The notes beneath the pieces were generated by a model. That model worked only from the letters and a program-made list of their open reading frames with translations, was not told the origin of the DNA and searched no databases. Shown here piece by piece: positions 1 to 61,611 of a DNA stretch of 64,000 bases (within the stretch, counting starts at the first letter, position 1; each line of letters begins with the position of its first letter). Position numbers and translations under genes: made by a program. The stretch is taken from NCBI GenBank assembly GCA_001179505.1, contig CDMY01001052.1, forward strand, positions 62,001-126,000, in the 5' to 3' direction. Source of the DNA: Vitrella brassicaformis CCMP3155. Its lineage: Eukaryota; Protista; Chromerida.

Positions 1-430
1 ACAAGACTCCATCCGCACCACCGACACCACACCACCGGCACAAACATACCACATGTTTGTGTGTATGTTCACAATGTGCAGCCAGCCACCCTTTGATGCA
101 TGTCATGTGCCGTTTCCATTGATTCATTCATTCATTCATAGTGTTCATTTATTGACACCCAATGAGAACGAATCAACTTAAGCAGGGTGTCTCTACAACA
201 CAGACGGAGGTGTGAAGCCGCCCCGATGAATTGAGTCAGTCATCCGTACAGCTAGCTATAGCTACCTGTCCTCGATAAGGTAGTCACCACCCCCCTCCTC
301 CTCTCTCTAGACATGGCTAACATGGTGTCTGGTGCGTGGTGTGGCCGTGGACAGACTCATCCGCCGCCCTCGTTGGACGGCGCCGTAGCCATGAACGCCC
401 CCACAGCCTGACCGACGCCTTTCTCCGTGG

Positions 431-2783
431 CTACTGCCTCCCTACCGCGCCCAGCACCACCAGGTGCTGCATCAGACTCTTGCCTGCAGATCCACCAGCA
501 CTAGCAGCAGCAGGTGGTGCCTGGCCCTGCGCCTGGGAATCGGAACTCGCTGACTGCTGCGGGGGGAGAGGGGGAGGGGCCATCGTGGCGTGGAGGTCCT
601 CTTCGGCACCTGACAACACAACCACAACATACACACATGCCGCCCGGCCCAGGTGGCTGCCTGCATCTTCAAGTGGCTGTCGGCTTGTCCTGGTCCTGAC
701 CTGGTGGTGGCGGCGTGATGCCCGGTCCGTCGACCAGCCCCATCGACGCCTGATAGGGCCGCACAGCACCAGCTGCTGGGTGGGCCCCCACACCCACACC
801 CACACCCACTCCCGCCCCTATCGGCATTCCCATGGCGTGCCCATGGATGTGCCTGTGCGCGATATGGTCGCCAGCACGACCCACGGCCCCGCCCCTGTCG
901 CGGCCGCCCTCATCCACGAGGATGTGCTCGCAGTTCTGGAGGAGAGGCACCCCGGCAATGCTCGCCAACTTATTGCGGTCAAAGATGACCTTGCTGAGGG
1001 CGTCGGTGAAGGTGGTGTTCTGGTTGACAAACACCGCCTGCGGCCCTGCTGCACCGGTGCTGCCAAACCTACACGACACGCCCATCCACACACACACACA
1101 GACACACACCTACACTGCCTGGCTGACCGGCCTGTCGCCTTTCTGCTGCTCTTCACACACACACACCCACCCACCGTGTCCTGAAGCCGACCAGCGGTCG
1201 TTTGACGACCTCTATGCCGAGAGGGCACTGGGGCGGGAGGCACTGCGAGAGCTTTTCGAGCACTCGCTCCGCCCGGGCGATCTCGGGAGCGAGGGCGGTG
1301 GACGGGGCCGACTCGTCGACGACCGACTCCCAGCCGGGCAGGAGGTGGAACTGATCGGCCTCGCCCTTCGGGCCCCAGATGTCACGCACAAACTGATCCG
1401 TCCATCGACCAAACCAAACCGCATACATCGACCGACATTCACTTTGGTCTGCGCAGTGGTTTTTTGCGGGGAGAGGGGGGCATGTGGGTGTGTGTGGGTG
1501 TGCCTGACACACCTGCTCGCGGTCTTCGCATGCCTGCTTGAAGGCGTTTTTGACCGACTTGAACTGCACAAAGTTGCGGATGCGCCCCCAGACGGCCCCC
1601 ACGCCTGCGTGGTTGAACTGGACGCGCACGCCCTTGTCCTGCACGATCTGCACGCCCAGGGGGGCCGGCCTGCCGTTGGCCTTCTTGGGGCAGTACTCCT
1701 TCAAACACTCGATGAGCTACACATACACACAACACACACACACACACAGAAAAATCTATGTTGTTTTGTTCTGTTCTGTGTGTGGCTGGGTGTGTGTGCG
1801 GGCGGTCTCTCTCTCTATCTCGCTCGCTCACGTGTTTGCCCTCCTCTCTGGGCGTCATGGTGCTGGGAGGGTTCAGTGCCTGGTGTGCCGCAGCAGCCGC
1901 CGCCGCACAGATGGCCGCCGGGTCCAGCCCCAACTCCTTCATGACCACGGCACTCTTGCCACGACCCCTCCCACCACCAGAACCGCCACCACTAGCAGCA
2001 GCGCTTTTCTCCTTGGCCGCCCGGCCCCGGCCCCGGCCCCGGCCCCTCCCCCTCCCCCGTCGGCCGCTCCCCTCATCCCTTGCCGCCGACGCAGCCAAGC
2101 GCTGCCCGGGCGTGTACTCGTCTTCATCCTCTATATCTCTGGCCGACCGTCGTCCGCGGCCGCCACCGGTCCTCTGTCGCTTGCTGCTGCTGCCGTTGAC
2201 CACCGACTCACGCTTATGGCCGGCATGGTTAGGGGGAGGGACCTGGTCGCCAGAAAACAATGGAGAAAGAAACGGGGCTATGCGTGTGTCTGTGTCTGTG
2301 TCTGCGAATGTGGGATGGTAGGTAACCTGTGCAGCGGCGCTCTGGAACAGCTGTAGCAGGCGGAGAGTCTCGGCGTGGTCGAACTTGGCCAGACTGGCGT
2401 CCATCGCCTCCACAAACCCATCACCCACCTGACACACACACACCACACACACACCACACACACACACACACCACCACATCGATGCCACCATACCCCGCAC
2501 GCACACGCATCGCAGGCTATATCACTGCGGTGTTCTCGTGTCGCCTTCTGAGTGCAGCGGCCGTACCTGAAAGCCCTGTGCGATTTTCTCGTAGAGCGGC
2601 GTATCCGTTAGAGTGGGGCACGACTCCTTGCGCAACCAACTGATTCAATTCACGCATAAGCAGCACACGGCTCTCTATAGGATATGTTGTGCCCTTCTCT
2701 TGCGACCCTGCCAAGCTTTTAAGCTTACTGCTGGAATGCGGTCTCGCCGAGCCACATGGCGCCGAGTTCGGCCAGGGCAGCAT
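431..2783 (-). CDS. Multi-exon hypothetical protein with RG-rich segment and two tandem divergent AP2-like repeats (both ends uncertain)
   Basis: In-frame exons flanked by GT/AG sites and (CA)n introns: VGDGFVEAMDASLAKFDHAETLRLLQLFQSAAAQ; GRGRGRGR-rich exon; LIECLKEYCPKK...PLGVQIVQDKGVRVQF...NAFKQACEDREQ; FVRDIWGP...CPLGIEVVKRPLVGFR; FGSTG...DALSKVIFDRNKL; GAEEDLHATM...GRQ* (stop at 431). The first exon and start codon are not resolved. Confidence 0.6.
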
Positions 2784-53000: not shown

Positions 53001-54454
53001 ACACAGACAGAAGTCCATCCACTGCCTCCCCTCCCTGTCCTGCAATGGGGCCTGGCTGGCTGATGGACAAGGGGGAGAGAGAGAGGGAGGGAGGGAGGGG
53101 GGGGAGGAGTGGTGTGTGTATGTGTGTGTGTGTGTGTGTTTGCTGGGCTGATGCACCTCCAGCCCCATGAAGCCGCACACGCAGAGAGCCTCTCTCTGGT
53201 AAGGTTAGACAGAATCGGCCAAAAAGCCAGCGGACATCCCCCGAGAAGGCCAGCACTCAACAGACAGCCACCTGCCTTCATAAAGACATGCTCTGCAGGA
53301 AAAGGGCAACAGAGGCAGGTCACTGCACAGATCGCTTCACCACACGCGTCTGCTCTCCTTCACCACTGGCTGACCGGGCGAGAAAGACAAAAGAGACATT
53401 CTCTCACCCGCTCCCTGTTCCCTCTCTCTGTAGGCCATTGCACCGCGCAGACACAGACTGACAGCCTCCATCGAGGCCGGTGTCAGCCTGCATTTGCGGG
53501 GGGCCTCATAACGCAGGCGCCATTCGGCCCCAACTGGGGGGCGGCAAGCCCGCCCCAGTCCTACCAGCCGTGCTATACCTGCCTACCAAAGAAGCCAGCC
53601 GGCGAAAAACGGCCGCGGCTCACTCTCTGTCAGAAGCTTATGGGTACTAGGCCTTGTCTGGAGTGAGCATTGCATCCATCCGCTCTCCTGCCTGCCCAGA
53701 GAGAGGTGGCTTTCCATGGCAGCCTGGCTATTCGGTGAAGGTCGGCTGGCTTCGGTCAAAAATCGCCTAGCTGTCCACAAAGAGTCTCGCTGACAGGTGC
53801 GGCGGTCACGGCATGGGGCTGGAGGGAGGTGCATCAGGCGCCAGCAAACACACACCGCACACACACACACACACGCGCACACCCCACTCCACTCCCCCCT
53901 CCCTCCCCTCTCTGTCCCTCCTTGTTTGCTCATCAGATCTATCTGCCTCTCGGCGCCCACTGGCTTGTGTGCAGACTCTCGCCGCCAGTCGCAGTGACCG
54001 ACCTGATGATGAGTGTGCCGTTGTAGCTCCGCGCGTAGAAGTTGTTGATCATGGCCGCCTTGGCGTGACCCACGTGCAGGTACCCGGACGGCTCGGGGGG
54101 GAACCGGACGACCACCTCGCCCATCACACCACCCTCCAGCTTGCCTGCACACACACATAGACAGGGAAGGAGAGGGAGAGGGAGAGGGAGAGGACGGTCG
54201 GGGACTCCGTAATGCGTGAGTCTTTCACCGAATTGGCTGGAAGGCGCTTCGGCGGCCGATTGCCCGCCGCTCGCTGGTCCCTTCTTGTGTGGGTGTCCGC
54301 CGCCTCCGCGGGCAGGCAGCCCGCCGCTGAGTGCCGCGGTGGTCTGCACCACCTTCAGCTCGCAGAGAGTGAGGTGGACGACGGGCTGTCGGTAGACAAA
54401 GGTGAACCACCGCTTCACATGGGGATAGGCCTTCAAGAGGTGGTCCCTAGTGGT

Positions 54455-54487
<33 letters not shown>

Positions 54488-55023
54488 GCACACGCACAGA
54501 AAGCCATATGCATGTGTCTGTCTGTCTCTCTGTGTGTGTGTGTGCTTGTGTGCGGCTCGGCTCACGTCTGGAACTTGCTTTGCTTGCCGATCTTAGCAAA
54601 CACCGCCAGGTCCGCCAGCGACAGCCGCCTGCCGACAATGAAGGTCCGCAGCTTGAGCCAGCCATCCAGCTCGCCAAGAGCACCCCCCTCGCCCCCCCTA
54701 GTCGCCGCCCATTCCACCCAGTGGTCCACGCTCGACATGGCCACACTGCCACTGCCGCCATACAAACCGAGCGTGTCATTGGTCAGCCGCGCCAGCAGCC
54801 GTGCCACTGACTGATCTGAGGCCACAAACGTCTTCTTGGACGGCAGGTCGAGCCTCACCTCGCCATCTGCTGAAGATGACGATGCTGTCGTCTGGTCTAT
54901 GTGGTTGTTGACTTTGAGGTCGCCCTGCCAGTTGACGAGTGCGGCGGTGATGAGGGAGCAGAGGGGGTAGGAGGAGGCATCGGTCGACGAGGGCAGGTGC
55001 AGTGTGTAGGCGTTGCCCGACAT
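50056..55023 (-). CDS. GluRS: Cytosolic glutamyl-tRNA synthetase (eukaryotic type, GST-like N-terminal domain)
   Basis: [19 protein letters not shown] (HIGH motif), [56 protein letters not shown] (KMSKS equivalent), [22 protein letters not shown]. The last exon DGKSKPMS...AQNGQ* ends at 50056. Confidence 0.97.
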
Positions 55024-55191
55024 GACGCAAGTCGATTGACGCCGTGGCCAAGATCTTAGAGGGCCTAGGCCACGGCGGAGCATGCCATAGCCTGCTGCCG
55101 TTTTTGTCGCTGATCTTTGTCGCGCTGATCTTTTCGAGCTCGCCCTCTGAGGCTAAGCTCGCGCGCAGATCTCTCTCCCCCCGCGAGCGCC
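55024..55191. promoter_or_regulatory. Probable bidirectional promoter (GluRS / RRN3) containing a 10-bp inverted repeat
   Basis: 168 bp between divergent ATGs. CGCCGTGGCC (55040-55049) and GGCCACGGCG (55068-55077) are reverse complements. Confidence 0.45.
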
Positions 55192-58100
55192 ATGTACGGC
55201 AAGGGGCACGTCGACCAGGATGCCTTCGCATCCACCACCCAAAGCGCCAGTGCCTCGCAGCCGAATGCGCCAGCGACAAGCAGGGCCAAACAGGCGGCAA
55301 GACAGACCAAGCAACACGCCAAGACAGCCACAAACGGTGCCACAGCCGCTCCCTCGAGCCAGGCGAGGCGCGTCGGGCCGCCGGCAGTCGAGAAGGTCTC
55401 GCCCACCAGGGTGAATGTGGAGCTACTGAATGAGGCGGCGGCACTGCTCGAGAAGCAGGGCGACAAAAGCCGTGAGAATGCCGGCGTTGCCTTCATAGAG
55501 CGGTTCGTCAAGGGCTTCAACTGGTTCATGGCGAGCGATGGCGTGGCCAGGAGGTTCACCAGCCTGCTGCTTGACATGCTGGCGACCAACGGCGATGCCA
55601 CCTCGATGGTGCTCGCGCAGCTTGTCAAGAAACTCAGGATGAGGTGAGTGAGTGGGTGGGTGGGTGGACAGACTGACATTGGATGGATGGATGGATGGAT
55701 GGATGGCTTGATGCTTTCAGGCCGAGTGACGAGGAGCTCGACGCCAAGACACCGACGATTGTCGTCGGTGAGTGAGTAATGAATGACAGAGCGGGAGGGA
55801 CACTCACACACGTCATCCATCTGGCTTGTCGCCTCCCTCTCTCGCTCTCTCTCTCTCTCTGTGTGTGTGTGTGCGTGTGTGTGTGTGTGTTGTGTGTCAG
55901 GTCGGTTTTCGTTTGAGTCCAGGGTGGCCCTGAAGCAGCGGATACGGACCATCATGACCGATGCAGGTACGCAACACAGACAGACAGACAGACAACACAC
56001 TCTGTGTATGTTTCTCTGTGTGTGCGTGTGTGCGTGTGTGTGGCATCCATCCCTTCACACACCTGACCTGTCAGCCGACGGTGAGGATCTGAAGGGCGAG
56101 GATTTCGAGCTCTTGCGAGAGGTCCTGAGGTACCATCCCAGAGCCGACTACAAACAAAAAGGTAAGGCGCGTTTGACGCCCGACGGCCGATCGGCCTCTC
56201 TCTGTGGAGTGGCGATGTGTGTGTGTGTGTGTGTCTGTCTACAGACTGTGTGGGTATCTTCGTGGCCCGCCATCCGAATGTCAAGTTCGACTGCCGGGCA
56301 TTCTTCGTCCGGAGGAGCGTCGGTGAGTTAGTTGAGGGAGGGAGGTAGGGAGCTGTTGAGTCAGGCATGCATTGACCCAACCCAAGCCAGCTCACACCAC
56401 ACCACACCACACACACAAGCCAACGAACACACCACACCACCCTGTGTCTGTCTGCTGCTGCAGGAATGCACGAGGACTTCAGCTACGTCCGGTGTGTGGA
56501 CGGCCTCCCCTCCGCGGACGCCTACGCCTACGAGAGGATATGCGACGCCATCGACCGTGTCTGCAGCTTCTTCCCACAGGCCACCCAGCTGCTGGTCAAG
56601 GTCCTGGGCGACAACCAGCCGCACCACCGCAAGAACGTCGAGGAGCACCAGAACTACACCCGCAGCATGCTCTGGCTCTGCAGACGCAAGCCGCAGATGC
56701 GCGCGGGGATACTCAAGCTCTTCATTGCGAGGCTCATCGACTTCGACGTCGAGATTAAAGAGGTGTTGTCGGGCGTGGTGTGGTGTGCTGTGGTGTGGAT
56801 GGGCGGGTGATGAGTGTGCGTGTGTTGTGTTGTGTTGTGTTGTGTTTGTGTGTAGGACGATCCCAACTCGATAGACATTGAGGAGTACGAGCTGTGGAAG
56901 CGCGAGCAGCTCAACTTCCTCTCTGTCCAGGTGTCCGTCGGCGCCAAAGACCCCGCAGAGGCACAAAAACTCCTGAGTGAGTCAGCCAGCCAGTCAGCCA
57001 AATCACATCACATCACACACACCGACACGTCAACATCAACACTGCCTGACGAATGAGTGAATGAATGCACCGAACCATCCATCAGATGACGAGGAGCGCC
57101 TCCGCCAGCTCTACCGGATGAGGCGGGGCGAGGAGGACATCGACAAAATGGCACAGGGCCTGGGTAAGTCAGTGAGCGACATCAACACGCGTGTACTGTA
57201 CGTGACAATGATTGGCCCATGTCCTCTCCCTCCCTTTCCCGTCTCCATTTCAGACCACCTCATGTCGATGGGCTTCGACTTCCTGCAAGCCGAGCTGCTC
57301 TCGCTCAGCCACAGCCCGCCCGTTAACCCGATCAAACCAGATCCCGACACAGACGGGGCCACACCACCACAGCCACAACAGCCACAACAGCAGCAGCAGC
57401 AGCTGCAGCAGCAGGCCTCCAGTATCAGCAGCAAGAGGGGCCGGGGTTTGAGTGTGGCGCACTGTGAGGGCGACGTGCTCATGGACGAGCTGCTGATGAT
57501 CTTCGAGCAGATCGTCTTGCCCACACACAGGTGAGGTGCCTGCACACACACACACACACACATACACACCCTCAGACAAACAGGGGAGGCGCGTGTGATG
57601 GTGTGGTGGTTGTTCTTTCTTGTGGTCTCTCTCTGTGTGTTGGTTGCATCGCATCAATCCCCTAGGTGCCGTCACACCCAGTTTCTGCTCTTCTACGCGA
57701 CGAGCCTCAAGCCGGCGTGGGCGGAGCGGTTTCTGCAGCTCCTCTTTGACCGCCTCTATGACTCCAACGTATACGTCGCCACGGTACGTGACGTGAATAT
57801 ATGTGTGTGTAAACACCCACAAGCCTTCTCGTCTCTGTGAGTGAGTGCCTTCATCGTCCGTGTGTCTGTCCCTCGTTCGATGCCAGCGTCGCAAGTGCGC
57901 CTTCTACATCGCTTCCTACGTCTGTCGGGCTGAGTTCCTGCCGGTGAGCAACCAGCCAACACCACACCACACCACACCACACCAATGCCAATGGATGCAT
58001 CAGTCAGAGGCAGTGCGTGTGGATGGATGGATGGTCTGGTGGGTTTGGTTTCTCTTGCTTTTTGCCTTTCGTTCCTCTCATCAGCTGGAGTTTTCCCGGC

Positions 58101-60716
58101 AGAGCCTGGTCTACCTTCTGGGGTTCCTGCACCAGCACTGCAACAAACTCGCCATCACCAACACACCCCACAACGTCCGTGAGCCAACAGAACAGCCAGC
58201 CACTGACTTGACCCAACACATCACATCACATCACATCACATCACATCACACACACGCGCCTGTCTCGGGGGGTGAGGTGCACTTCTCTCTCTTGAATCAG
58301 ACGGCGGAGCGGGCGGCAGGTTTATTGCGCGCCGGCAGCGCGTCGGCCTACCCCATCAACCCCGAAGGCAACCGCACCCTCTTCTACGCGGTGTGCCAGG
58401 CCGTCTGCTACATCGTCTGCTACCACGGCGCCGCCTTTATGGCCGACACAAGGAACGGCGGGCTCGACTCCATCCTGCATGGAGAACAGTCGCTCATCGC
58501 CATCTTGCAGAGCCCCTACAGGCCGCTTGCGAACATACGCAAGGGAATCGCCACGTGAGCTGAGTGTGTTTCTGTTTGTTCTGTTTGTGAGGGTGCCGGT
58601 GGGGTGCATGGCGTGGCGCGGCGTGTTGTGCGTGGGTGTGGTTGTCAGGGAGCTGAGGAACTTGTTCCATCGTCTGCCGGGGTACGATTACCTCAGGCCG
58701 CTGTTCGAGCAAGACGCTGCGGTGGGTCGGTGGGCGGACGGGATTGACACACACACACTCCCTGCTCCTTCGTGTCAATCCAATCCACCACCTTGTTTGT
58801 TCTTGTCAGGGCGGCGGCGGCGACCACGGCGGGGGCGAGCTGGAAGCAATGACAGACGACTCATTCGGTGAGGGAGTGCAGCAAACACACCGAAGACCCA
58901 CAGCGGCAGGAAATATCGGAATCCCATGCCGTTGCTCTCTCTGTTTTGGTGGGTGGATGCCTCGCAGATCCTGTGGATGCGATGTTTCCCTTCGGTCCCT
59001 ACCGTCTGCGCCACTCGGTGCGGTTCGTGCAGGACAAGTACCGTGACTACGCCGCGCCCGCCCTGGCAGACATAAAGGCAGAGGGCACCACACAGTTGGC
59101 CCTCCCCGACCAGGCTGCCATCAGGAACACCAGCATGACCAGCAGCTCGGTAAGACATACAGACAGACGTGCTGCTTGACAAGAGGGTGTCTGGATGGAT
59201 GGATGGATGTGCACTCTCTCTCCCTCTGTCTCTCTGTGTGTGTGTGTGTGTGTGTGTGTGTATCAGGGTGGTGGGGTCGGCAGCAGTGAGGGTGGGCGTG
59301 ATTCTGAGGCGCTTGTGGGGATGGAGGAGGCCATTATCTATGAGGAGGAGGATGACACTGAGGGGTTCGATAGGCTGCAGGTACACACATTCACTCTCAC
59401 ACACACGGACCGACAAGAAACGCGTCACTCTTTTCCACGTGTATGTGTGTGGATTGCGCCCTTTTCTTCAGTCCGACCGTCGGGTGACGGCCATGACGGC
59501 GAGTATGTGCGAGGAGGATGACGAGGACGAAGACGCACCCATGTCAGACGACCACGGAGAAGACGAGGACGACGGTAAGAGTAGAGTGTATGCCACGCCA
59601 TGCCATGCAATGCCTTGCCCTATCTGTCGTGACTCCGTTCCTTTCTGCACCCCTCCTGTGTGTGTGTCTGTGTCTGTGGGTGTGCAGTGTTCAGCCCCGA
59701 CCTGAAGCCCTCGGCCTCCTTCTTCCCCCGACCTGAAGCCCTCAGCCCCCTGCTGGCCACCAAGGATGGCGGCCCCATGCTGGCAGACAGCGACCCTGTC
59801 GACGCCACCCAGCACCACGACACACACCACGAGTGCGACATGCAACTCATGGACATTGACGTAAGCGCGCTTGCGAAGGCAACGAGGCGGGCAAGGAGGA
59901 AGGCATGGCAACATTCCCTCGTGTGTGTGTGTCTCTTGGGTGCAGGAGGAGGGCGAAGAGGCGTATGAAGCAGACGAGCCCTTCACGATCGAGCCCTTCA
60001 CGATCGAGCCCTCCGCACACACGCTGTCATCGTCCCTCCGCCAGACCACCCCCCTCCCGCACTCGCCCAACATGTCCCCTCCCCTCCCAGCACTCAACCC
60101 ACCGCACACGCCCGAGTCACCCAAGCCGCCCGAAGGCCCCTCGTCATCTCTCGAGCGCATCCTGCAGTGCCCCGCCTTCAAACGGTCGGGCTTGCGTGGC
60201 ACCAGCAGCAGAGACTCAGACGAGTGTGAGTCACCCGAGAGCCGTCGGTCGAGCCTCCGGGAGCGGCCCTGGAGCTACGACCACAGCCCGGGCCACTCTT
60301 TCCGCAACGACACGCCGGGCAGCTCGGTGCTCGAGACGCCAATGCTGCAGAATGGCGCGACGAAGAGGGAGTTCTCGCCGCCCTTTGAGTCGCTCCCGCC
60401 CCCACTGACGACGTCGACAGTGACAAAGGCAGCAGCCATGGGCGGTATGATGCTGCGGGAGTCGTTCCGGGCGGCCAGCGGCCCGCTCCCGCCCACGTCG
60501 CCGCTGTCACTCAAGGGCAAGATGCTGAACCCTAGGGGTCTCTTCACACATGGCAAGATGCCCACTCAGACGAGACGGCCAGGCCGCAAGAATTCGACAG
60601 GGAGCGAGGGGTCGTCGAGCAGCTGCCTGAGCAGCACCGCAGGCAAGGGCGGCAAGGGCGGGCGGAACAAGGCCGGGCTGGTGAGGAAGACCATGAAGGA
60701 AGATGGCGGCGCATAA
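55192..60716 (+). CDS. RRN3: RNA polymerase I-specific initiation factor RRN3/TIF-IA homolog with inserted DUF3223-like domain and long disordered C-terminus
   Basis: RRN3-like segments: ICDAIDRVCSFFPQATQLLVKVL...NYTRSMLWL...ILKLFIARLIDFDVEIK; ELLMIFEQIVLPTHRCRHTQFLLFY; RRKCAFYIASYVCRAEF; FYAVCQAVCYIVCYH; SLIAILQSPYRPLANI; MFPFGPYRLRHSVRFV. The spliced exons 55900-56500 give the DUF3223-like pattern. Confidence 0.85.
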
Positions 60717-61125
60717 TAAATATGCACAGACAGAGGCAGGTGGGCAGATGGGGAGGTGGGCGGGCTAGACGGTGGTCACAAGAGAGAGAGATGGGACGGG
60801 CCAGCCAGGTCAGCAGCAGCAGGGTGTCTTGCTTGCTCATACAGCAAGGGCGATAAGATCACTCACGCCGCTGTCTGTCTGTCTGTCTGTCTGTCTGTCG
60901 GTTTATGTGGCCGTCAATCCATTCATCCATTCATCCATCCATCCATGCAGTGGTTGGTCGGGGCGGGATAAGGTGTGTGTGGCTCGGCGTGGGGTCTATG
61001 TGCCTGTGGTGTCGGTGAGTGCTGTTTTTTTTTGGTCGTTCGTATCGGTCTCAACGTTGGGCTGGGGGGGATGTTTCTCTCTCAGTTGGGCTGATTGACT
61101 GATTCCATGTCCATGTCCATGTCTC

Positions 61126-61425
61126 NNNNNNNNNNNNNNNNNNNNNNNNNNNNNNNNNNNNNNNNNNNNNNNNNNNNNNNNNNNNNNNNNNNNNNNNNNN
61201 NNNNNNNNNNNNNNNNNNNNNNNNNNNNNNNNNNNNNNNNNNNNNNNNNNNNNNNNNNNNNNNNNNNNNNNNNNNNNNNNNNNNNNNNNNNNNNNNNNNN
61301 NNNNNNNNNNNNNNNNNNNNNNNNNNNNNNNNNNNNNNNNNNNNNNNNNNNNNNNNNNNNNNNNNNNNNNNNNNNNNNNNNNNNNNNNNNNNNNNNNNNN
61401 NNNNNNNNNNNNNNNNNNNNNNNNN
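61126..61425. other. Assembly gap (300 N)
   Basis: Run of N. Confidence 0.99.
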
Positions 61426-61611
61426 GGGGGGGACGGCTGGGAGGGACGGTTGCATGTCGACGACACATCCATCTTGCCTGTCCATCCTGTCTGCCTGTGG
61501 AGTGAAGGAGTGAATGAATGGCTGGCTCATGGCCCAGAGACGTGCCACTCCACTTTTCTGTCTCTCTGTCAGTCAGTCAGTCCCCTATCTGTCTAGATGT
61601 CTATATATTCC

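What the first reader, a model, noticed from the sequence alone, without database searches (positions are those of the whole stretch)
55720..56520. RRN3 with a DUF3223 (DCL/DOMINO1/NRPD1-NRPE1 'DeCL') domain inserted into its first acidic loop
Seen in sequence: four small exons inside the RRN3 gene, plus the start of the next exon, splice in frame to RPSDEELDAKTPTIVVGRFSFESRVALKQRIRTIMTDAADGEDLKGEDFELLREVLRYHPRADYKQKDCVGIFVARHPNVKFDCRAFFVRRSVGMHEDFSYVRCVDGLP. RRN3 helical sequence resumes immediately afterwards. Established: the pattern 'l.ell..HP...K....I.V..HP.f..rcF.v.R..G..eDFSy.kC' is DUF3223. It occurs in the rRNA-processing proteins DCL and DOMINO1 and in the C-termini of the plant Pol IV/V largest subunits. 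Human RRN3 has a phosphorylated acidic loop at about this position. Inference: this lineage has fused an rRNA-maturation/polymerase-associated module into the Pol I initiation factor, which could couple rDNA initiation to processing or silencing.
Basis: partly seen in the sequence, partly recalled or inferred. Interest (0 to 1): 0.8.

Follow-up and report, generated by a model that had tools for sequence, protein, structure and literature searches.

The report
RRN3 carrying an inserted DeCL domain
The RNA polymerase I initiation factor RRN3 of the alga Vitrella brassicaformis really does carry an extra, expressed DUF3223/DeCL binding domain. The same insertion is present in every dinoflagellate and apicomplexan RRN3 I could test, yet I found it mentioned in no paper.

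Summary
A 20-exon gene on the + strand (CDS 55192-60713) encodes a 1165-aa protein identical to the public Vitrella brassicaformis CCMP3155 entry CEM39811.1 / A0A0G4H7C7. Spliced transcript contigs from four runs in three studies contain all four small exons, and one 3687-nt contig matches the model's spliced length exactly.

Pfam finds DUF3223 at residues 183-255 (E 6e-13) directly followed by RRN3 at 262-747 (E 4e-69). An AlphaFold model (pLDDT 84) superposes on yeast and human RRN3 (Z 28-32), and its insert superposes on the bacterial DUF3223 structure 2K0M.

It is a true insertion between two HEAT helices. The site matches the human loop that carries the CK2 sites Ser170/172, not the large acidic loop further downstream.

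It is not specific to Vitrella. All 16 proteins scanned with Pfam have DUF3223 followed by RRN3: Vitrella, dinoflagellate-type transcripts, Babesia, Theileria, Neospora, Besnoitia and Digyalum. Fungal and Ancoracysta RRN3 lack the insert.

The insert is as conserved as the RRN3 core. Public protein tables already list both Pfam domains, but I found no paper that mentions the fusion. Its function is inferred, not shown: an RNA- or protein-binding surface on the Pol I initiation complex.

The parts
55192..60716 (+). RRN3 gene (Vbra_19783 / CEM39811.1). It has 20 coding exons and encodes 1165 aa. The stop codon is at 60714-60716, and the transcript contig reaches at least 55149-60863.
   Evidence: Gene model. 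The protein is identical to P0001.
55399..55641 (+). The last part of exon 1, encoding four N-terminal RRN3 HEAT helices (residues about 70-150) that precede the insert.
   Evidence: AlphaFold helices at model positions 12-90. VIA-align maps model residue 11 to yeast Rrn3 residue 88 and model residue 41 to human residue 108. hhalign to the canonical RRN3 'NLVSA' repeat gives probability 86%, E 5e-6.
55642..56516 (+). The inserted DUF3223/DeCL domain (residues 151-261). It is encoded by exons 2-5 (55721-55767, 55901-55966, 56075-56161, 56245-56322) plus the first 53 bases of exon 6. Four introns lie within it (introns 2-5, all phase 1); intron 1, at its 5' edge, is phase 2.
   Evidence: Pfam PF11523, E 6e-13, covering profile positions 2-75 of 75. 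The domain model has pLDDT 90. Its only significant PDB fold match is 2K0M (E 1.2e-5, TM 0.69/0.76; Z 13.2). The domain profile hits NRPD1 at 9e-15, NRPE1 at 3e-13 and 2K0M at 6e-13.
56517..59053 (+). The RRN3 core (residues 262-747, exons 6-16). It includes the large acidic and poly-Q loop at residues about 346-478.
   Evidence: Pfam PF05327, E 4e-69, profile positions 134-554. Fold matches: yeast Rrn3 Z 31.8 and human RRN3 Z 28.2 with rmsd 2.2 A.
59054..60713 (+). An acidic, Ser/Pro-rich C-terminal tail (residues 748-1165) with no recognised domain.
   Evidence: Translation. Pfam finds no further family. pLDDT is below 50 at the end of the modelled part.

Best explanation
Shown. This is the Vitrella brassicaformis orthologue of RRN3/TIF-IA, the factor that makes RNA polymerase I competent for initiation. 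It has a folded DUF3223 (DeCL) domain of about 105 residues inserted between two N-terminal HEAT helices. The insert is transcribed and spliced into the mRNA. The same insert at the same site is present in dinoflagellate, chromerid and apicomplexan RRN3, and it is as conserved as the RRN3 core. It is therefore an ancient, selected part of the myzozoan protein.

Inferred. The domain most likely acts as an extra docking surface on the Pol I-RRN3 initiation complex. By analogy with DeCL in plant Pol V (which binds the exonuclease RRP6L1), DOMINO1 (which binds RNA and La1) and ciliate Mlp1 (where it aids RNA folding), I commit to one reading. The domain tethers an RNA-processing or surveillance partner, or the emerging pre-rRNA itself, to initiating Pol I. 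It does so from the loop that in mammals holds the CK2 Ser170/172 switch for RRN3 release.

I put the identity and conservation at about 0.95, and this specific mechanism at about 0.35. The single confidence figure given for this explanation (0.75) is for the shown part together with the general claim that the insert is a functional binding module.
For: - Splicing and transcript evidence.
- Identity to CEM39811.1.
- Both Pfam domains above their curated cut-offs in Vitrella and in all 15 other homologues scanned. Precomputed PF11523+PF05327 in 26 dinoflagellate-type proteins.
- Taxa: Babesia, Theileria, Neospora, Besnoitia, Digyalum, Polykrikos, Ceratium, Effrenium and Breviolum.
- Fold: RRN3 Z 28-32 and 2K0M Z 13.2. 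The domain alone matches 2K0M and the Atlas clusters of bacterial DUF3223, ciliate La/DUF3223 and plant NRPD1/E1 tails.
- Insertion site.
- Conservation: the insert has 39% mean pairwise identity against 37-41% for the RRN3 core and 22% for the N-terminal helices.
- Function of DUF3223 elsewhere: PMC12972900 (RNA and La1 binding; RRP6L1 binding in NRPE1), PMC9705548 (Mlp1).
- CK2 loop: PMC5041454.
- Yeast HEAT repeats H2-H4 form the A43 stalk interface: PMC4947163.
Against:
- The domain's net charge is about zero across 35 homologues, which does not favour non-specific RNA binding.
- Helix geometry suggests that the insertion loop lies on the edge of the solenoid opposite the serine patch that faces A43. 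This is my inference, not a measurement.
- Ciliate, perkinsid, Chromera, Cryptosporidium and gregarine RRN3 could not be fetched, so the age of the insertion is only bounded.
Confidence: 0.75

Rival explanations
1. The domain is a protein-only adaptor. It contacts Pol I itself or a lineage-specific promoter factor, and so compensates for the SL1, Core Factor and UBF components that cannot be recognised in alveolates.
For: PMC12235521 reports no recognisable SL1, CF, UAF or UBF in the alveolates it queried. DeCL has documented protein partners (La1, RRP6L1; PMC12972900). The net charge is neutral. The insertion lies in the N-terminal third of RRN3, which in yeast forms the stalk and clamp interfaces (PMC4947163).
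Against: No partner is known. Dinoflagellates, chromerids and apicomplexans would all have to share that partner. This reading overlaps with the best explanation, and nothing here separates the two.
Confidence: 0.3
2. The domain is an RNA-sensing release switch. Binding of the nascent 5' pre-rRNA at this loop ejects RRN3 from Pol I after promoter escape, doing the job of CK2 phosphorylation of Ser170/172 in mammals.
For: The insert occupies the loop equivalent to human residues about 153-185. Phosphorylation of that loop triggers TIF-IA release (PMC5041454). DUF3223 of DOMINO1 binds RNA with nanomolar affinity (PMC12972900).
Against: This is purely positional reasoning. The domain is not basic. 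The distance to the RNA exit channel is not known.
Confidence: 0.15
3. The insert is an inert structural passenger, a stable domain tolerated in a surface loop with no binding function of its own.
For: Surface loops of HEAT proteins tolerate insertions. Coccidian versions even carry a low-complexity stretch inside the domain.
Against: The insert is as conserved as the RRN3 core across dinoflagellates, Vitrella and apicomplexans. The family-wide HP and FSY.RC motifs are nearly invariant.
Confidence: 0.1
4. It is a gene-model artefact: the DUF3223 exons belong to a separate or nested gene, or are usually skipped.
For: Exons 3, 4 and 5 are each a multiple of three bases flanked by phase-1 introns, so skipping them would keep the frame. 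Assembled contigs can hide rare isoforms.
Against: Single transcript contigs run from exon 1 to exon 20 with exactly the predicted length in three studies. Transcriptome-derived proteins of dinoflagellates have the same architecture. No competing ORF lies on either strand.
Confidence: 0.03

Closest known systems
RRN3 / TIF-IA (yeast Rrn3 3TJ1, 6RRD; human RRN3 7OBA)
   Same: Pfam RRN3 at E 4e-69. The HEAT-repeat fold superposes at Z 28-32 (422 residues on yeast, 344 of 347 on human). The conserved C-terminal FPF.PY.L motif is present, and a large acidic loop follows the equivalent of human residue 260.
   Different: A folded 105-residue DUF3223 domain replaces the short loop between two N-terminal HEAT helices. 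In human that loop is the acidic stretch with the CK2 sites Ser170/172. The positions aligned to human Ser199/Thr200 are Gln/Ala in Vitrella. The first HEAT repeat of yeast (before residue 88) has no modelled counterpart. There is also a long acidic, Ser/Pro-rich tail.
DeCL domain at the C-terminus of plant Pol IV/V largest subunits (NRPD1, NRPE1)
   Same: Same Pfam family. The profile of the RRN3 inserts hits NRPD1 at 9e-15 and NRPE1 at 3e-13, with a shared HP...K and rcF.v.r.dG..dFSY.kC pattern. In both cases the domain is attached to a non-Pol II nuclear transcription machine.
   Different: In plants it is a terminal appendage of the polymerase subunit itself. Here it is internal to a HEAT solenoid of an initiation factor, in a different eukaryotic supergroup.
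Alveolate La/DUF3223 proteins (Tetrahymena Mlp1)
   Same: The same domain is fused to a factor that handles nascent non-Pol II transcripts, in the same broad lineage (PMC7928011, PMC9705548). The Atlas fold match has TM 0.78.
   Different: The partner domain is a La motif and the DUF3223 is C-terminal, acting on Pol III transcripts.
Stand-alone DUF3223 proteins (plant DCL and DOMINO1; bacterial Rru_A0810, PDB 2K0M)
   Same: The fold matches: 2K0M rmsd 2.8 A over 97 columns, TM 0.76. Sequence match E 6e-13.
   Different: Those are single-domain proteins. Here the N and C termini of the domain are stitched into another protein's loop.

Membership tests
RRN3 (PF05327) | Sequence match to the family profile above the curated cut-off | tested here: met
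   234.1 bits against a cut-off of 25, E 4e-69, residues 262-747 on profile positions 134-554.
RRN3 (PF05327) | HEAT-repeat solenoid that superposes on solved RRN3 structures | tested here: met
   The model has pLDDT 84 and pTM 0.82. 6rrd_O gives Z 31.8, rmsd 3.2 A, 422 residues. 7oba_O gives Z 28.2, rmsd 2.2 A, 344 residues.
RRN3 (PF05327) | N-terminal HEAT helices continuous with the core, meaning an insertion rather than a replaced N-terminus | tested here: met
   hhalign of the pre-insert segment to canonical RRN3 gives probability 86%, E 5e-6. The VIA-align ranges start at model residue 11 = yeast residue 88.
RRN3 (PF05327) | [quoted passage not shown] | not testable with these tools
   There is no complex modelling or assay here. 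The Toxoplasma orthologue is listed with a fitness score of -3.78 in the supplement of PMC12235521.
DUF3223 / DeCL (PF11523) | Sequence match above the curated cut-off over the full profile | tested here: met
   49.6 bits against a cut-off of 21, E 6e-13, profile positions 2-75 of 75. Exon 4 alone gives 20.6 bits.
DUF3223 / DeCL (PF11523) | Same fold as the solved family member 2K0M | tested here: met
   Foldseek E 1.2e-5, TM 0.69/0.76, rmsd 2.8 A. It is the only hit below E 1e-3. VIA-align Z 13.2 with 103 of 104 residues aligned.
DUF3223 / DeCL (PF11523) | Conserved HP and F-S-Y-x-R/K-C motifs | tested here: met
   They are invariant or at least 90% conserved in 35 RRN3 inserts, and they are aligned to the same motifs in NRPD1 and NRPE1.
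DUF3223 / DeCL (PF11523) | RNA-binding and/or protein-binding activity | not testable with these tools
   Known only for DOMINO1, NRPE1 and Mlp1 (PMC12972900, PMC9705548). The net charge here is about zero.

The most novel reading that the evidence does not exclude
DeCL/DUF3223 is an ancient accessory module of the non-Pol II nuclear transcription systems. In Myzozoa it is built into RRN3, where it senses the nascent pre-rRNA or recruits an exosome-type partner. It thereby replaces the metazoan CK2 Ser170/172 release switch, or substitutes for the missing SL1/Core Factor contacts. If so, Pol I initiation in apicomplexan parasites would depend on a domain that their animal hosts lack.
Probability: 0.2. 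Interest if true: 0.8.

Novelty: new variant of a known kind. Interest (0 to 1): 0.6.

Why it matters
RRN3 is the universal on-switch of ribosomal RNA synthesis. Its architecture is reported as uniform from yeast to human. A recent survey of the alveolate Pol I machinery aligned this very protein (Vbra_19783). Neither its text nor its supplements contain the term DUF3223 (PMC12235521).

A 2026 paper states that DUF3223 is so far known only in plant DCL proteins, Pol IV/V and ciliate La proteins (PMC12972900). The finding therefore adds a fourth, widely conserved context for the domain. It links the domain to Pol I as well as to Pol III (La) and Pol IV/V.

It also marks a parasite-lineage-specific, conserved feature in a protein that the Toxoplasma fitness score listed in that survey's supplement (-3.78) suggests is important for growth. 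It offers a concrete, testable handle on how Pol I is recruited and released in organisms where SL1, Core Factor and UBF cannot be found.

Tried and rejected
- Word-index protein search with a 20-sequence full-length alignment, and with P0001 restricted to residues 150-345. Each returned only a single protein: the alignment's own first sequence, P0031, and P0001 itself. I therefore could not fetch ciliate, perkinsid, Chromera, Cryptosporidium or gregarine RRN3.
- ESM Atlas search by features. It gave only generic RRN3 clusters at scores of 0.79-0.82, below the level worth trusting.
- phmmer of exon 4 alone against PDB sequences: no hit, because the piece is too short.
- The machine-read alignment in the supplement of PMC12235521. 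It shows the FSY.RC motif in the Toxoplasma, Sarcocystis and Eimeria rows, but the text is visibly corrupted. I use it only for the gene name and for the absence of the word DUF3223.
- My first reading was that the insert lay well away from any acidic loop. I dropped it. The insert is not in the large acidic loop, which follows the equivalent of human residue 260. It does sit at the smaller acidic CK2 loop.
- A nested or antisense gene was ruled out from the ORF list and from the continuous transcripts.
- I built no phylogeny of DUF3223 domains, because no non-RRN3 DUF3223 sequences were available as references.
Full report
OBSERVATION

The region lies in a GC-rich, intron-dense eukaryotic gene on the + strand. 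I enumerated GT-AG pairs that keep the frame between the open stretches. This gave one canonical solution per intron for the first eleven introns. The remaining introns were fixed with the transcript joints.

The model has 20 exons. The CDS runs from 55192 to 60713 with the stop at 60714-60716, and it encodes 1165 aa. Exons 2-5 (47, 66, 87 and 78 nt) and the first 53 nt of exon 6 encode residues 151-261.

An HMMER scan of 1.84 billion representative proteins, using exon 6 as query, returned a 1165-aa protein at 100% identity. That protein is letter-for-letter my model. It is CEM39811.1 / UniProt A0A0G4H7C7, named 'unnamed protein product' or 'uncharacterized protein', from Vitrella brassicaformis CCMP3155. 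PMC12235521 lists it as Vbra_19783.

EXPRESSION AND SPLICING

Eight public runs hold the stretch. I laid four of them, from three studies, and all four contain spliced contigs.

X7 record 9 covers window 55150-60863 in 3687 nt, which is exactly the spliced length of the model. In X1, X7 and X8 the contig segment between the end of exon 1 and the start of exon 6 is 282 nt. That equals 5 + 47 + 66 + 87 + 78 - 1, so all four small exons are included. Without exon 3 it would be 216 nt.

Junction 5 and eleven downstream junctions are listed directly as GT..AG joints. Junctions 1-4 are not listed individually, because the microsatellite-rich introns were masked. Contigs also cannot exclude rare exon-skipped isoforms. 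Exons 3-5 are each a multiple of three bases with phase-1 introns on both sides, so this caveat is worth stating.

No competing ORF lies on either strand.

WHAT THE PIECES ARE

Pfam on the whole protein gives two families:
- DUF3223 (PF11523) at residues 183-255: 49.6 bits against a cut-off of 21, E 6e-13, profile positions 2-75 of 75.
- RRN3 (PF05327) at residues 262-747: 234 bits, E 4e-69, profile positions 134-554.

Exon 4 alone already hits DUF3223.

A profile of 35 RRN3 inserts hits the DeCL regions of plant NRPD1 (E 9e-15) and NRPE1 (3e-13), and the bacterial DUF3223 protein 2K0M (6e-13). The alignments share the HP...K and rcF.v.r.dG..dFSY.kC motifs.

An AlphaFold2 model of residues 60-780, built with a 42-sequence alignment, has mean pLDDT 84 and pTM 0.82. 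It superposes on three structures:
- Yeast Rrn3 in the Pol I pre-initiation complex: 6rrd_O, Z 31.8, rmsd 3.2 A, 422 residues, model 11..688 on chain 88..614.
- Human RRN3: 7oba_O, Z 28.2, rmsd 2.2 A, 344 of 347 residues.
- 2K0M, through its insert: Z 13.2.

The domain modelled alone has pLDDT 90. Its only significant PDB neighbour is 2K0M (E 1.2e-5, TM 0.69/0.76, rmsd 2.8 A). In the ESM Atlas it matches bacterial DUF3223, ciliate La/DUF3223 and plant Pol IV/V tail clusters (TM 0.70-0.79).

WHERE IT IS INSERTED

Four helices (residues about 70-150) precede the domain. By hhalign they match the conserved 'NLVSA' HEAT repeat of canonical RRN3, aligning to P0034 residues 106-156 (probability 86%, E 5e-6). 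Structurally they start at yeast residue 88 and human residue 108.

The helix after the domain aligns to human RRN3 from residue 186-188.

So this is a true insertion between two consecutive HEAT helices. In a canonical fungal RRN3 the two helices are joined by about 14 residues. In human the equivalent is the loop of about residues 153-185. By my knowledge of the human sequence, and consistent with the published alignment in PMC12235521, that loop is acidic. [quoted passage not shown]

The large acidic loop of yeast and human RRN3 lies further downstream. It corresponds to Vitrella residues about 346-478.

In yeast, HEAT repeats H2-H4 form the interface with the A43 stalk, and helix alpha-6 touches the clamp (PMC4947163). 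The insert is in that N-terminal third. From helix geometry I infer that the insertion loop lies on the edge opposite the serine patch.

The residues aligned to human Ser199/Thr200 are Gln/Ala in Vitrella.

DISTRIBUTION

Most hits to exon 6 align from its second to fourth residue. That means they share the tail of the DUF3223 domain.

All 16 proteins I scanned with Pfam have DUF3223 followed within a few residues by RRN3 starting at profile position about 127-147. Those whose species could be identified are:
- Chromerid: Vitrella.
- Piroplasms: Babesia bigemina, B. duncani and B. bovis; Theileria equi and T. orientalis.
- Coccidia: Neospora caninum and Besnoitia besnoiti.
- Digyalum oweni.

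The other seven scanned proteins come from transcriptome or metagenome assemblies without a species label. Six of them group with the dinoflagellate-type set.

Three further lines of evidence add to this:
- B. gibsoni (P0032) and Polykrikos kofoidii (P0027) match an HMM that I built from the RRN3 inserts.
- A further 26 dinoflagellate-type proteins, including Ceratium, Effrenium and Breviolum, carry precomputed PF11523+PF05327.
- That insert HMM matched 54 of the 70 proteins fetched.

Nine of the 16 non-matching proteins can be explained. Three are fungal (Umbelopsis, Paraphysoderma, Dispira), one is from Ancoracysta, and these four are canonical RRN3. Five are short or N-terminally truncated fragments. 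The other seven are unlabelled assembly proteins that I did not characterise.

Coccidian inserts have a low-complexity stretch inside the domain.

PMC12235521 reports that Haemosporida lack any recognisable RRN3. I could not retrieve ciliate, perkinsid, Chromera, Cryptosporidium or gregarine sequences. The insertion is therefore at least as old as the common ancestor of dinoflagellates and apicomplexans, and possibly older.

Among the fusion proteins, the insert has 39% mean pairwise identity. The RRN3 core segments have 37-41% and the N-terminal helices 22%. For Vitrella against the others, the insert is the best-conserved segment at 35%. Five exons and four internal introns also argue for an old, integrated part of the gene.

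HOW IT PROBABLY WORKS

What is known about DUF3223:
- In Arabidopsis DOMINO1 it binds RNA with nanomolar affinity and binds the La1 protein.
- In NRPE1 it binds the exonuclease RRP6L1 and is required for Pol V function in vivo but not for catalysis (both as summarised in PMC12972900).
- In Tetrahymena Mlp1 it is needed for RNA-chaperone-like activity (PMC9705548).
- Alveolates also fuse it to the La motif (PMC7928011).

I therefore take the RRN3 insert to be a functional binding module on the Pol I-RRN3 complex. My preferred reading is that it tethers an RNA-processing or surveillance partner, or the nascent pre-rRNA, to initiating Pol I.

Two rivals remain that I cannot separate from it here. 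One is a protein-only adaptor to Pol I or to an unknown promoter factor; alveolates lack recognisable SL1, CF and UBF (PMC12235521). The other is an RNA-triggered release switch that takes the place of the CK2 loop.

The near-neutral net charge of the domain (mean -0.6 over 35 sequences) weighs somewhat against non-specific RNA binding.

An inert passenger is unlikely given the conservation. A gene-model artefact is excluded by the transcripts.

NOVELTY

The two Pfam domains are listed side by side in precomputed public tables, so the architecture is machine-annotated.

In the held literature, no paper contains both 'DUF3223' and 'RRN3'. The 2025 review of apicomplexan Pol I aligned these proteins, and neither its text nor its supplements contain the term DUF3223. 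A 2026 paper states that DUF3223 has so far been found only in plant DCL proteins, Pol IV/V and ciliate La proteins.

I class it as a new variant of a known kind: real, ancient, conserved, unremarked in the papers I could search, and of untested function.

The scan's earlier notes held nothing on this gene.

Noticed in passing
window 53942-55023, - strand: A divergent neighbour gene starts about 170 bp upstream of the RRN3 ATG. Its first exon has a GST_C / Arc1p_N-like domain. A following exon carries the class I Glu/Gln-tRNA synthetase catalytic start with an HVGH motif (PF00749, E 6e-16). The two genes probably share a bidirectional promoter.
   Followed up: partly
window about 61120-61440: A run of N, an assembly gap, lies just downstream of the RRN3 3' end. 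It shows up as X-runs in all reading frames of the ORF list.
   Followed up: no
window 55644-56463 and other RRN3 introns: The introns are packed with GT/CA and GGAT/CAGA microsatellites. The reads tool masked these stretches (55639-55716, 55829-56045, 56207-56248), which is why junctions 1-4 are not listed individually.
   Followed up: partly
window 57339-57537 (exon 9): A CAG/poly-Gln tract inside the large acidic loop of RRN3 attracts many unrelated contigs. The depth spikes there and many loose ends appear. It is not a feature of expression.
   Followed up: no
P0010 628-786; P0012 676-919: In coccidian RRN3 (Neospora, Besnoitia) the DUF3223 domain is itself split by a low-complexity stretch of 60-150 residues before the final FSY.RC strand. 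The whole proteins are 2273-3087 aa long.
   Followed up: partly
window 56544-56552 (P0001 residues 281-283): The positions aligned to human RRN3 Pro198-Ser199-Thr200, the inhibitory phosphosites, read Pro-Gln-Ala in Vitrella. The fusion-family consensus there is HP.A. That mammalian regulatory site is therefore not conserved.
   Followed up: partly
runs X1, X2, X7, X8: Transcript contigs identical to the window occur in runs labelled with three different coded organism names (A, B, C). These are presumably strain or label variants of the same culture.
   Followed up: no
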